DNA from: Octopus bimaculoides
Taxonomy: Eukaryota
Length of the DNA stretch: 64,000 nucleotides
Assembly (NCBI RefSeq): GCF_001194135.2
Contig: NC_068999.1
Location: 3,002,975-3,066,974 of the forward strand
Reading direction: 5' to 3'
In this document: positions 1,922-52,006 of the stretch, piece after piece
How positions within the stretch are numbered: position 1 is the stretch's first letter
Layout: each line of letters begins with the position of its first letter
Notes under the pieces: model-generated
Database searches by the model: none
Told to the model about the DNA's origin: nothing
What the model saw: the letters and a program-made list of their open reading frames with translations, nothing else
Program-made: the position numbers and the translations under genes

Positions 1922-4900
1922 CTATAAAGCGTGCATCATGAGTGTTGGTTAAAACTGTTGTGGAAGGAGGAGGATGAGGAGGAGGAGAAGGAGATTCTGT
2001 TGTAGAATTACTATTACATAGGTTTTTAGTGTTATCATCTTTGCAAGTCCAGCGTCCATTGCAGTTGCACTTACAATTAAGTTCCAAACAGCCTTCAATT
2101 CTACTAGACCAAGTGTTTCCTGCGTAAATTTTTCCGTGCAGTGAACAGGGTTTACATCTTCCCTGCGGCACCCGTACCCTAGATGGGGGGATGCATGTAT
2201 CACTTAGAACTTCACATGACCAGGAACCATTGCATGAGCAAAAACATTCCATTTTCTTACATCCTTTCTGAATGACCTTTGAACTTTCTCCCCGATAAAC
2301 AGAACCATTCACTAAACAGTTTTTGCATTGGTCTCCGCAGATGTAGCGTGCCTTTTCAGCAGGGCACACCCACGACCCATTACAGTAACATGTACATGTG
2401 TATTCAAAACAGTTAACTTGACGTTTAAACTGGCTGTTACCCTGATAGTGATACCCATTTAAGATACATTGGTTGCAATCTGTGAGTTCACTTTTGCCAC
2501 ATATGTTTATAGATCTTTCAGGGGGACACGCCCAGGTTCCATCACAACCGCAGTTACATTCATACTGAAAGCAGTTTAGGGTATAGCGGAAATTACTATT
2601 GCCAAGAACAGATTTATCATTTACGGTGCAATTTTGGCAAACGTTTGAAGGTTTTGTACTTTCAACACCGGTGTCTGGAAGAGAATCGTTACCACATATT
2701 GGTTGCGTTCGATCTCCTGGGCAGAAAAATTTACCATCACAGAAACACCTACATTGATACCTAGTACAACCGAAATCATATTCAAAAGTTGAGTTGCCCT
2801 CAATAACTTTTTCTCCAAGGTGACATTTTTTGCAGAAACCAATTAAACGCCTTCTTGAGCAAATATGAATGGCAGGCCCGGCAAGACAGTTCCATGTGCC
2901 GTCACAATTGCATGAACAGCGGAAGCGCAAACAGTTTCGATCGAAAGAGAAGAAACTATCTCCAGCATATTTATTTCCTCGCACAACGCAGCTTCTGCAC
3001 GTACCATCAGACTTCACTTTATCTTTAACTACACTGCAAACATTAGCCGTTAGGTGCTTGGGACAATGCCAGTTACCATTACAACGACATTTACACTGGA
3101 AGCGTCGACAACCCTGCCTATAAGTGAACCATTGGTTACCTGCATATTTTTTGCCTTTTACTTCACATTGCAGACAGGTTTCGCGTAATGGTTCTTCGTA
3201 AGTGCATACATTTTCAGGCTGCTGGGACGGGCATTTCCAATTCCCCTCACAATCACAAGAGCACTTGAATTTGAAGCAGGCCTCTAATAAATCAAATTCC
3301 TCGCCCCCCTTATACAACTGGCCTTTAACATTACAGTTGGTACATTGTCTGCCAGACTGACCTTGTAATCCATGACAAATGTCAACGGCCGTTTCAGTTG
3401 GACATTCCCAGCTACTGTCACAACTACATTTACAACGGTAGCGATAGCAGGCGTTAATTAGGTAAAATACCGTATTTCCCTTGTAAGAATTACGCTTGAT
3501 AAAGCAGCTTCGGCAGTTGGTATTATTTAGTGGTGCTAAAGTAACCTGTGTTTGATTATTACATGTATCTACTGCAGTCTCTGTAGGACATTGCCATTTT
3601 CCATTACATGAACAAGTACACTGATAGAGCATACAATTGCGTTTATAAGTAAACCTTGTATTTCCTTTATATGTTTCATTGTTTACTCTACAATCCCTAC
3701 ATCTTGGTGATTGGGTTGGAGCATCTATATTCGCAGCGCAAATGTTAATCGTTTTATCTGTGGGGCACACTATTTCGCCATCACAACCACAAGAGCATGT
3801 GTATTTTAAACAGCCATATTGGTAATGGAACATAGAGTTTCCTCTATAGAACTTACCTTGTTTGATACAATCCTTGCATTGAGGTGACTTATTAACTGTG
3901 CAGTTAGGCATTGCAGTTTTTTGAAAGCAGTCTATACTTCCATTGCATTGACATGTACACAAATGTTTCTCACAGTTGTCTTCCTGATAGAAGCTAATGC
4001 CTGGAGAATATTTCACTCCATTAGCTAAGCACTTTCTCTTTTCACCAGGGCAGTGATATTGATTCACAGATGAACAACGGTTTATGCTTTTGTCATTTGG
4101 ACAATTCCAAGTTCCATTGCAGAAACAGTAGCACAAATGATGATAGCAACGGTTATTAACTATGAAGGCTGTGTTTCCTTGATATACTTCATTACTTAAT
4201 CTACATGTTGCACAAGATCTGTCAGATTGAAGAATTGAGGGGTCACCACAAATATATTCTGCATTATGGGCAGGACAATTCCAGCTTCCATCACAATTGC
4301 ATTTACATTTGTATCTATAACAATTTTCATCATGTTGAAATTCTGTATTTCCTTTAATGATTTTTCCCTTTGCATCACATTGTTGGCAATTTCCTGTATG
4401 TCCACCACAAATATATTCTACACTTTCAGCAGGACAATTCCAGCTTCCATCACAGTTGCATTTACATCTGTATCTATAACAATTCTCTTCATGTTGGAAT
4501 TCTGTATTTCCTGAATAAATCCTACCCTTTGCATTACATTGTTGGCAATTTCCTGTGCTGGCACCACAAATATATTCTGCATTATGGGCAGGACAATTCC
4601 AGCTTCCATCACAATTGCATTTACATTTGTATCTATAACAATTTTCTTCATGTTGAAATTCTGTATTTCCTTCAACGATTTTTCCCTTTGCATCACATTG
4701 TTGGCAATTTCCTGTGCTGGCACCACAAATATATTTTGCGTTTTCAGCAGGACAATTCCAGCTTCCATCACAATTGCACTTACATTCGTACCTGTAGCAA
4801 TTTTCTTCATGTTGAAATTCTGTATNNNNNNNNNNNNNNNNNNNNNNNNNNNNNNNNNNNNNNNNNNNNNNNNNNNNNNNNNNNNNNNNNNNNNNNNNNN

Positions 4901-52006: not shown

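What the first reader, a model, noticed from the sequence alone, without database searches (positions are those of the whole stretch)
1922..52006. Giant secreted beads-on-a-string protein of about 56-60 small disulfide modules
Seen: 28 joinable exons give about 11.4 kb of CDS, a signal peptide, 25 single-module exons and about 31 modules in one exon, with no other domain type visible. Knowledge: the CxxxGxxYxxGxxF..C-x4-CxC..G.W.C pattern resembles the N-terminal subdomain of VWC (PF00093), fibronectin type I (PF00039) and pacifastin (PF05375), but lacks the second half of a full VWC domain. Inference: a lineage-expanded extracellular scaffold (egg-coat, adhesive or mucus component), a multivalent ligand binder, or a polyprotein precursor. 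I do not recognise it as a named gene.
Basis: partly seen in the sequence, partly recalled or inferred. Interest (0 to 1): 0.9.

Follow-up and report, generated by a model that had tools for sequence, protein, structure and literature searches.

The report
Giant octopus protein of FnI-like beads
This is a real, already catalogued but unstudied octopus gene (Octopus bimaculoides LOC106876685) for a secreted protein of at least 3,593 residues made almost only of 57 or more small disulfide-locked beads, and it belongs to a mollusc-wide family whose bead has no domain-database entry but folds like the fibronectin type I / VWC / pacifastin modules.

Summary
On the minus strand there are 28 joinable exons. 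They are a start codon split off at 52006-52004, a signal-peptide exon at 42648-42591, 25 single-module exons that are all phase 1-1, and one 6-kb exon (7947-1922) with 31 modules. My model, built from the window alone, is 100% identical to RefSeq XP_052830841.1, "uncharacterized protein LOC106876685" of Octopus bimaculoides. The gene is therefore catalogued but unstudied. It also runs off the window, because the last exon (module 57) is missing.

RefSeq simply abuts the flanks of two gaps that fall in coding sequence. Sister species carry 10 copies of the 53-residue repeat against 6 here, so about four copies probably lie in the 669-N gap.

The module hits no Pfam family. AlphaFold models are confident (pLDDT 92). 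Foldseek puts fibronectin type I modules first (three modules: E = 5e-6). A module profile weakly reaches pacifastin/VWC repeat proteins (hhalign 84%).

Orthologs with 30-69 modules occur in chitons, gastropods, bivalves and cephalopods, and none has been characterised. The RefSeq label "Balbiani ring protein 3-like" is a misnomer.

Function is inferred: a flexible, multivalent extracellular binder or scaffold. Interest is moderate.

The parts
52004..52006 (-). Start codon ATG at the 3' end of exon 1, followed by donor GTAAGT (phase 0). The 5' limit of exon 1 (UTR) is unknown.
   Evidence: The Met joins to exon 2 to give MGPATV..., identical to XP_052830841.1.
42591..42648 (-). Exon 2: signal peptide GPATVRSLLLTAWALVHLK plus the first base of the next codon. 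Acceptor is ttgtag, donor is GTAAGT.
   Evidence: The N-terminus is conserved in O. sinensis (MGRATVKSLLLVAWALIHFK).
41501..41674 (-). Exon 3, 6-Cys module 1
40649..40834 (-). Exon 4, 6-Cys module 2
35061..35273 (-). Exon 5, 6-Cys module 3
32254..32445 (-). Exon 6, 6-Cys module 4
30659..30862 (-). Exon 7, 6-Cys module 5
28675..28890 (-). Exon 8, 6-Cys module 6
27513..27722 (-). Exon 9, 6-Cys module 7
26806..27036 (-). Exon 10, 6-Cys module 8
25618..25827 (-). Exon 11, 6-Cys module 9 (type A of the duplicated A/B exon pair)
24478..24702 (-). Exon 12, 6-Cys module 10 (type B)
22495..22704 (-). Exon 13, 6-Cys module 11 (type A)
21934..22158 (-). Exon 14, 6-Cys module 12 (type B)
20323..20466 (-). 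Exon 15, 6-Cys module 13 (type B). Its 5' part is lost in the gap 20467-20566.
   Evidence: RefSeq joins it directly to exon 14.
19831..20040 (-). Exon 16, 6-Cys module 14 (type A)
19269..19493 (-). Exon 17, 6-Cys module 15 (type B)
18004..18213 (-). Exon 18, 6-Cys module 16 (type A)
17442..17666 (-). Exon 19, 6-Cys module 17 (type B)
16126..16335 (-). Exon 20, 6-Cys module 18 (type A)
15122..15346 (-). Exon 21, 6-Cys module 19 (type B)
14419..14628 (-). Exon 22, 6-Cys module 20
13022..13249 (-). Exon 23, 6-Cys module 21
12633..12842 (-). Exon 24, 6-Cys module 22
11803..12033 (-). Exon 25, 6-Cys module 23
10462..10671 (-). Exon 26, 6-Cys module 24
9298..9513 (-). Exon 27, 6-Cys module 25
1922..7947 (-). 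Exon 28, the giant exon. It holds 31 modules, mostly of the 8-Cys form CxxC..C-x4-CxCxC..C..C, with two 6-Cys variants and two partial modules at the gap. It has a phase-1 acceptor (tttcag) and ends in a phase-1 donor (ATAG|GTAAGT), so the gene continues beyond the window.
7268..7654 (-). 129-aa spacer inside the giant exon that is not a module. Its first half is rich in Pro, Thr and Ser. It is conserved in O. vulgaris and Argonauta (129 and 133 aa).
4244..5963 (-). Tandem array of 159-bp (53-aa) repeats that are 88-92% identical, interrupted by the 669-N gap at 4826-5494. About four copies are probably hidden in the gap.
3855..3857 (-). Internal consensus donor (CAAG|GTAAGT, phase 1) inside the giant exon. 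RefSeq isoform X1 and O. sinensis isoform X2 use this junction to skip the last 11 modules of the giant exon.

Best explanation
**Identity (shown).** The locus is Octopus bimaculoides LOC106876685. It has 28 coding exons in the window and a 29th beyond it. It encodes a secreted protein of at least 3,593 residues: a signal peptide, then 25 six-cysteine modules with one exon each, then a giant exon of 31 mostly eight-cysteine modules with one 129-residue spacer, then a final six-cysteine module.

**Module (shown at fold level).** Each module is an independent 44-47-residue double beta-hairpin. It has the fold of a fibronectin type I module and a cysteine layout like the N-terminal half of VWC or like pacifastin.

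**Disulfides (inferred).**
- The six common cysteines pair 1-4, 2-6 and 3-5, as in pacifastin.
- The two extra cysteines of the eight-cysteine form pair with each other.
- All cysteines are then used inside modules, and the chain is a flexible string of rigid beads.

**Evolution (shown and inferred).** The gene grows and shrinks by tandem duplication of symmetrical phase 1-1 exons and of 159-bp units within the giant exon. This suggests that length and valency are the selected properties.

**Function (inferred, about one chance in three).** It is a soluble or matrix-bound extracellular multivalent binder or scaffold in body fluid or mucus. Its beads would capture extended protein or glycan ligands by edge-strand pairing, as tandem fibronectin type I modules do.
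For: **Identity**
- The exon model built from the window is 100% identical to XP_052830841.1.
- Cluster names give the organism and locus.

**A real gene**
- 56 modules, all on one strand.
- Consensus splice sites, all phase 1-1.
- No stop codon in 10.7 kb.
- The signal peptide is conserved in O. sinensis, and the terminal module is conserved from chiton to octopus.

**Fold**
- Single module: pLDDT 91.7.
- The top 14 PDB matches are FnI modules, TM 0.52-0.64 (13 of them FnI; one is a MUC2 D-domain chain), rmsd 1.4-2.7 A for most.
- Three modules against FnI6-9 and FnI7-9: E = 5.4e-6 and 1.7e-5.
- The profile search of PDB sequences finds only fibronectin.
- Link to VWC/pacifastin.

**Beads on a string**
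- Three-module model: pLDDT 84.8 but pTM 0.46.
- Linkers are 2-33 residues.

**Extra disulfide**
- Cys at module positions 1 and 32 are both present in 489 of 594 modules, both absent in 101, and split in 4.

**Copy-number flux**
- A/B exon pairs are 88-92% identical.
- 6 against 10 copies of the 53-aa repeat, and 25 against 38 six-Cys modules in Argonauta.

**Body-fluid lead**
- A Biomphalaria glabrata protein named 'balbiani ring protein 3-like' belongs to this family.
- A protein of that name was abundant in snail plasma retained on columns of schistosome larval proteins (PMC5433772).
- One paralog carries a C-type lectin domain.
Against: - No expression, proteomic or binding data exist for the octopus gene, and no paper mentions it.
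- The disulfide map rests on analogy and covariation, not on coordinates or chemistry.
- The Foldseek E-value for a single module is weak (0.09). Small disulfide-rich hairpin folds can converge.
- I could not verify that the snail plasma protein XP_013096729.1 is the same accession as the family member I found.
- Binding to columns may have been non-specific, as the authors of that paper note.
- The RefSeq model is a prediction. I could not inspect its transcript support.
Confidence: 0.6

Rival explanations
1. It is a structural polymer: a component of a secreted fibre, cement, egg capsule or gel. This is the role the RefSeq label 'Balbiani ring protein 3-like' implies. Chain length would give mechanical properties, and chains would be cross-linked.
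For: - The protein is giant, secreted, 10-13% cysteine, and contains almost only repeats.
- Repeat number changes quickly, with near-identical tandem copies, as in silks and mucins.
- It has a Pro/Thr/Ser-rich spacer.
- A review notes sp185/BR3-like cysteine cassettes in pearl-oyster byssus and sea-star footprints (PMC12817120). I did not check whether those proteins belong to this family.
Against: - The BR3P signature CX10CXCXC (PMC5816233) is absent from this protein and from the snail proteins that carry the name.
- Cysteines come in even, covarying sets per module. No obvious free cysteine is left for intermolecular cross-links.
- The only experimental sighting of a likely family member is in cell-free snail plasma.
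Confidence: 0.25
2. It is a multi-headed serine protease inhibitor, or an inhibitor polyprotein of the pacifastin kind. It would act either as one chain or after being cut into single modules.
For: - The module profile reaches proteins made of Pacifastin_I repeats. hhalign gives 83.8%.
- It has the same number and order of six cysteines.
- From my own knowledge, pacifastin itself is a multi-domain precursor.
Against: - The Pacifastin_I HMM does not hit at E <= 10.
- From memory, pacifastin's reactive site sits in a short C-T-x3-C loop. Here that loop is C-P-x8-C with a conserved Tyr-Ile/Val.
- Dibasic sites occur in only 19 of 54 linkers. Most 8-Cys modules are 2-7 residues apart, with no cleavage motif.
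Confidence: 0.08
3. It is a growth-factor trap of the chordin / kielin / crossveinless-2 kind. Many VWC-like modules would bind BMP/TGF-beta family ligands in the matrix.
For: - The module resembles the N-terminal subdomain of VWC.
- From my own knowledge, that subdomain carries much of the BMP contact in crossveinless-2, and multi-VWC proteins such as kielin exist.
Against: - The VWC HMM gives no hit.
- The second VWC subdomain and its CCxxC motif are absent.
- Fast copy-number change and near-identical repeats do not fit a dosage-sensitive morphogen regulator.
- No other domain of chordin or kielin is present.
Confidence: 0.07
4. It is not one functional gene. The array would be an assembly artefact, a pseudogene, or several genes merged by prediction.
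For: - Ten gaps lie in the window, two of them in coding sequence.
- The frame differs across the 669-N gap as written.
- One exon is truncated by a gap.
Against: - 10.7 kb is free of stop codons, with consistent splice phases.
- Duplicated units are 88-92% identical, not 100%.
- Orthologs of the same layout occur in O. vulgaris, O. sinensis and Argonauta, including an open repeat array where this assembly has its gap.
- The N- and C-termini are conserved.
Confidence: 0.02

Closest known systems
Fibronectin type I module (Pfam fn1, PF00039), as in fibronectin, tPA and factor XII
   Same: - Size and fold are the same: a two-stranded hairpin followed by a second sheet.
- FnI modules are the best and most consistent PDB structural matches.
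- Fibronectin is the only PDB sequence reached by the module profile. In that alignment the first Cys, the CxC and the W-x-C line up.
- Both occur in tandem arrays.
   Different: - FnI has 4 cysteines; this module has 6 or 8.
- The fn1 HMM does not hit.
- This protein has 57 or more modules and no other domain type, against 12 FnI modules mixed with FnII and FnIII in fibronectin.
- It is found in molluscs. From my own knowledge, FnI is regarded as a chordate domain.
VWC / chordin-like cysteine-rich repeat (PF00093), N-terminal subdomain
   Same: - The motif C-x3-G-x2-Y-x-G-x2-F ... C ... CxC ... G ... C is shared.
- The module profile reaches proteins that Pfam calls VWC.
   Different: - The second subdomain and its CCxxC motif are missing.
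- The spacing is C-x4-C-x-C instead of C-x2-C-x-C.
- The VWC HMM gives no hit.
Pacifastin inhibitor domain (PF05375), and the Pacifastin_I/VWC repeat proteins of molluscs (for example O. bimaculoides A0A0L8H6G5)
   Same: - The six cysteines come in the same order.
- The N-terminal hairpin has the same Y..G..F motif.
- Both form tandem arrays separated by short linkers.
- hhalign gives 83.8%.
   Different: - There are two extra residues between Cys2 and Cys3.
- The Cys5-Cys6 loop has 8 residues instead of 4.
- Most modules have an additional disulfide.
- The Pacifastin_I HMM gives no hit.
Balbiani ring protein 3 (sp185) of Chironomus, and the BR3P repeats of VEGF-C
   Same: - Both are giant, secreted, cysteine-rich repeat proteins encoded by genes with many introns.
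- RefSeq names the snail and O. vulgaris homologs after it.
- Both contain a CxCxC run.
   Different: - The BR3P signature CX10CXCXC (PMC5816233) does not occur once.
- I did not have the Chironomus sequence, so direct similarity to it was not tested.

Membership tests
Unnamed mollusc family (RefSeq 'uncharacterized' / 'balbiani ring protein 3-like'; e.g. Argonauta GAB1605393.1, Mactra KAL4216390.1, Physella XP_059157445.1) | Tandem array of the 44-47-residue module C(xxC)..G..Y..F..C-x4-CxC(xC)..G.W.C..C | tested here: met
   56 modules in the window. The family profile finds 127 representative proteins, with up to 67-69 modules per protein.
Unnamed mollusc family (RefSeq 'uncharacterized' / 'balbiani ring protein 3-like'; e.g. 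Argonauta GAB1605393.1, Mactra KAL4216390.1, Physella XP_059157445.1) | N-terminal signal peptide, and no transmembrane segment or other domain | tested here: met
   The signal-peptide exon is at 42648-42591. Pfam finds nothing in the full 3,593-aa protein. The signal peptide was judged by reading the sequence; no predictor was run.
Unnamed mollusc family (RefSeq 'uncharacterized' / 'balbiani ring protein 3-like'; e.g. Argonauta GAB1605393.1, Mactra KAL4216390.1, Physella XP_059157445.1) | Conserved last module of six cysteines that ends the protein at its final Cys | tested here: met
   It is present in XP_052830841.1 and in chiton, gastropod, bivalve and cephalopod members. The exon that encodes it is outside the window.
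Fibronectin type I (PF00039) | Match to the Pfam fn1 model | tested here: not met
   No Pfam hit at E <= 10 for modules or at E <= 0.01 for the whole protein.
Fibronectin type I (PF00039) | FnI fold (small double-sheet disulfide module) | tested here: met
   Foldseek: 13 of the top 14 PDB matches are FnI modules. The three-module model gives E = 5.4e-6 and 1.7e-5 against FnI6-9 and FnI7-9. This rests on predicted models, not a solved structure.
Fibronectin type I (PF00039) | Two disulfides, 1-3 and 2-4 | tested here: inconclusive
The module has one or two further disulfides.
VWC (PF00093) | Match to the Pfam VWC model | tested here: not met
VWC (PF00093) | Ten-cysteine frame with CxxCxC and a second subdomain carrying CCxxC | tested here: not met
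   The module has 6 or 8 cysteines, the spacing C-x4-C-x-C, and no CC pair.
Pacifastin_I (PF05375) | Match to the Pfam Pacifastin_I model | tested here: not met
   The same model does hit the distant relatives P0079 and P0101 strongly.
Pacifastin_I (PF05375) | Serine protease inhibition through the loop between Cys5 and Cys6 | not testable with these tools
   The loop here is 8 residues long with a conserved Pro and Tyr-Ile/Val. Only an enzyme assay can test activity.
Balbiani ring 3 protein (BR3P) repeat | Repeated signature CX10CXCXC (as given in PMC5816233) | tested here: not met
   No occurrence in P0138, P0014, P0016, P0020 or P0192.
Balbiani ring 3 protein (BR3P) repeat | Significant sequence similarity to Chironomus BR3/sp185 | not tested
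   The Chironomus sequence was not on hand.

The most novel reading that the evidence does not exclude
The module would be an undescribed, mollusc-wide domain family with the fibronectin type I fold, a fold usually treated as a chordate invention. It is used here in the longest arrays known for that fold (57-69 per chain). The protein would be a major body-fluid or mucus component that captures extended ligands or parasite and microbe surfaces by multivalent edge-strand binding, with valency tuned by rapid exon and repeat duplication and by frame-neutral exon skipping.
Probability: 0.25. Interest if true: 0.6.

Novelty: new variant of a known kind. Interest (0 to 1): 0.4.

Why it matters
- A family of very large secreted proteins, conserved from chitons to octopuses, has no name, no Pfam model and no known function.
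- Defining its module would let hundreds of mollusc gene models be annotated. These are now labelled 'uncharacterized', 'RanBP2-type domain-containing' or, wrongly, 'Balbiani ring protein 3-like'.
- The module bears on how the FnI, VWC and pacifastin small-disulfide folds are related, and on whether an FnI-like fold exists outside chordates.
- If the snail plasma lead holds, the family is a candidate humoral binder in mollusc-parasite interactions.
- For genome work, the locus shows how short-read assemblies under-count modules. RefSeq's 3,593 residues is a lower bound.

Tried and rejected
**Start of the gene**
I considered an in-frame ATG at 41738 that would give MRGLSFFLFFCYLSIYLFIC. I rejected this when the true signal-peptide exon turned up at 42648-42591 with a phase-0 acceptor that fits the split ATG. 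The 41738 stretch is the polypyrimidine tract of the acceptor.

**Searches that found nothing useful**
- Pfam on modules, on both halves of the big exon and on the whole protein: nothing.
- PDB sequence search with 830 aa: nothing.
- The first word-indexed protein search found only 12 distant homologs and missed the species' own RefSeq model. The exhaustive profile search was needed.
- Extra modules or a last exon elsewhere in the window: none.
- Rfam and tRNA scans of the window: nothing.
- Literature searches for locus and accession identifiers: no papers.
- A byssus lead from a review could not be followed to sequences.

**Readings rejected or left open**
- The polyprotein reading was rejected on the linkers.
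- UniProt's 'RanBP2-type' label for P0140 and P0143: the PROSITE-style zinc-finger pattern, which I recalled from memory, does not occur in the protein. I did not pursue this further.
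Full report
**What is in the sequence**

The window is AT-rich eukaryotic DNA with ten N gaps. A scan of all six frames for the cysteine core found 52 matches, all on the minus strand. An HMM built from the modules raised this to 56 on the minus strand, and nothing credible on the plus strand or outside 1922-41674.

Twenty-five modules sit in their own small exons:
- Each has a polypyrimidine tract and an AG acceptor, and a GT donor (the acceptor of the exon cut by the gap at 20467-20566 is hidden in the gap).
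- The 24 complete exons are 174-231 nt long, always a multiple of three.
- Each starts and ends in phase 1.

The other 31 modules lie in one exon, 7947-1922. It is also phase 1-1 and ends in the consensus donor ATAG|GTAAGT.

**The 5' end**

I first thought this was too little to be a start. However, an exon at 42648-42591 has a phase-0 acceptor and a phase-1 donor and encodes GPATVRSLLLTAWALVHLK.

**Identity**

- Joining my exons gives three stop-free stretches of 852, 1735 and 967 residues.
- An exhaustive profile search returned giant proteins with up to 69 modules. Cluster look-up named them.
- My three stretches are 100%, 100% (over 1,732 of 1,735 aa) and 99.9% identical to residues 1-852, 853-2584 and 2585-3550 of XP_052830841.1, 'uncharacterized protein LOC106876685' of Octopus bimaculoides.
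- The last 43 residues of that protein are a 57th module. They are not encoded anywhere in the window, so the gene runs past the window's low end.

**The gaps**

- The 669-N gap lies in a tandem array of 159-bp units that are 88-92% identical. Its flanks stop and restart in the same repeat register. As written they are out of frame, but only because of the arbitrary N count.
- RefSeq simply abuts the flanks. O. vulgaris and O. sinensis carry 10 such repeats in an open frame against 6 here. About four copies, roughly 636 nt, are probably hidden, close to the estimated gap size.
- The 100-N gap at 20467-20566 removes the 5' part of one module exon.
- The remaining gaps are intronic.
- The duplicated A/B exon pairs between 15 and 26 kb are 82-92% identical, so they are true paralogs and not assembly duplicates.

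**What the module is**

*Sequence databases*
- Pfam finds nothing for modules, exon halves or the whole protein.
- PDB sequences give nothing with a single query.

*Structure*
- AlphaFold2 on a 46-module alignment gives pLDDT 91.7, with four strands in two hairpins.
- Foldseek against the PDB lists fibronectin type I modules in 13 of the first 14 places, with TM 0.52-0.64 and rmsd mostly 1.4-2.7 A over about 40 residues. E-values are weak, 0.09-0.6, as expected for 50 residues.
- A three-module model has pLDDT 84.8 and pTM 0.46. It matches FnI6-9 and FnI7-9 at E = 5.4e-6 and 1.7e-5, and crystal FnI pairs at about 1e-3.

*Sequence profile*
- The module profile hits one PDB sequence only, fibronectin 2-3FnI, at E = 0.34. 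The first Cys, the CxC and the W-x-C are aligned.
- Weak members of the exhaustive search are proteins that Pfam calls Pacifastin_I and VWC repeats.
- hhalign of my modules against those repeats gives 83.8% probability, P = 8e-6.

The module is thus a divergent relative of the FnI / VWC N-subdomain / pacifastin group, and it fails each of their Pfam models.

**Two module forms**

- The 8-Cys form adds a Cys three residues before the first common Cys and a Cys after the CxC.
- In 594 modules from 17 mollusc proteins, these two cysteines are both present 489 times, both absent 101 times, and split 4 times. I infer that they bond to each other.
- By analogy with pacifastin and FnI, the six common cysteines would pair 1-4, 2-6 and 3-5.
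- The six-Cys exons also encode a conserved hydrophobic stretch before the first Cys. I could not model it.

**The family**

- Named members come only from molluscs: a chiton, many gastropods and bivalves, and octopods. All are 'uncharacterized' or 'hypothetical', apart from the automatic label 'balbiani ring protein 3-like'.
- Architectures are alike: a signal peptide, long arrays, one or a few spacers, and a conserved six-Cys module that ends the protein.
- Octopods have a long N-terminal six-Cys array, with 25 modules here and 38 in Argonauta. Bivalves are nearly all eight-Cys, with 68-69 modules in Mactra.
- An unrelated mollusc contig shows the same plan of a giant exon plus single-module exons.
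- The BR3P signature CX10CXCXC (PMC5816233) is absent, so that label misleads.

**Function**

Nothing is published on the octopus gene. These points suggest that valency or length is what is selected, on a flexible chain of rigid beads:
- even, covarying cysteine sets;
- low inter-module confidence in the three-module model;
- short linkers;
- rapid change in copy number;
- exons that can be skipped without changing the frame;
- predicted isoforms that use an internal donor.

One experimental lead exists. A B. glabrata 'balbiani ring protein 3-like' protein was abundant in snail plasma eluted from columns of schistosome larval proteins (PMC5433772). A B. glabrata protein of that name is a family member with 31 modules. 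I could not confirm that the accessions are the same.

I therefore favour a soluble or matrix multivalent binder that works by edge-strand pairing, as tandem FnI modules do. This is an inference at about one chance in three. The rivals, in order, are a structural polymer, a protease inhibitor array and a BMP trap.

**Verdict**

The observation and the structural interpretation are right. The gene is already catalogued but unstudied, and the module is an undescribed variant of a known fold group. Interest is moderate.

Noticed in passing
window 9298-41674, the 6-Cys exons (e.g. 25780-25827, 24655-24702): Each six-Cys exon encodes a conserved hydrophobic stretch 8-12 residues before the first Cys (SIIVTSQSDIRYC, RFYVIHQTDVDSC, SVVVRTVSSIKYC). 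It is probably an extra beta-strand that the eight-Cys modules lack.
   Followed up: partly
window 3855-3857 (minus strand): A consensus donor CAAG|GTAAGT lies inside the giant exon. It is the junction in RefSeq isoform X1 and in O. sinensis isoform X2 (..CKDCIKQG|CKVNGT..), and it drops the last 11 modules of the giant exon.
   Followed up: partly
window 52032-52070 (minus strand): An upstream ATG at 52070 opens a 12-codon reading frame, MECCCSCCCCCC-stop. It lies 64 nt before the start codon and would be a uORF if it is within the 5' UTR.
   Followed up: no
window 56665-56910 (+) and 37170-37668 (+): A remnant of a Mos1/mariner-type transposon: Pfam HTH_48, E = 2e-7. An 85% identical copy lies in intron 4 of the gene.
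   Followed up: partly
window 31126-31805 (+ strand ORFs, intron 6): ORFs that read like the C-terminal part of a Tc1/mariner transposase (..PNIWPSNSPDHNPLDYYVWG..). This is recognised from memory only; Pfam gave no hit.
   Followed up: partly
window 1803-1900, 13321-13640, 38426-38626, and many (TG)n / (TATG)n tracts: Long trinucleotide tracts (TAT/TAC type, poly-Tyr when translated) and dinucleotide microsatellites fill introns and flank exons. Several N gaps adjoin them.
   Followed up: no
P0138 (XP_052830841.1) residues about 845-900; window 20323-20466: RefSeq joins exon 14 directly to the gap-truncated exon 15 (..PPRNE|AFSFVLDC..). This creates a half module in the reference protein.
   Followed up: yes
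P0201 (Batillaria attramentaria): A paralog in another mollusc carries an N-terminal C-type lectin domain ahead of the module array.
   Followed up: no
L001 6389-14296 (ENA metagenome contig ERZ25071447:ctg83706): A mollusc contig inside a metagenome assembly shows the same gene plan: one ORF with 18 modules, flanked by single-module exons. The organism is not identified.
   Followed up: partly
P0140, P0143 (UniProt A0A0L8GI31, A0A0L8GI74): Older UniProt entries for fragments of this gene are titled 'RanBP2-type domain-containing protein'. The zinc-finger pattern, as I recall it, does not occur in the protein, so the title looks like a false positive.
   Followed up: partly
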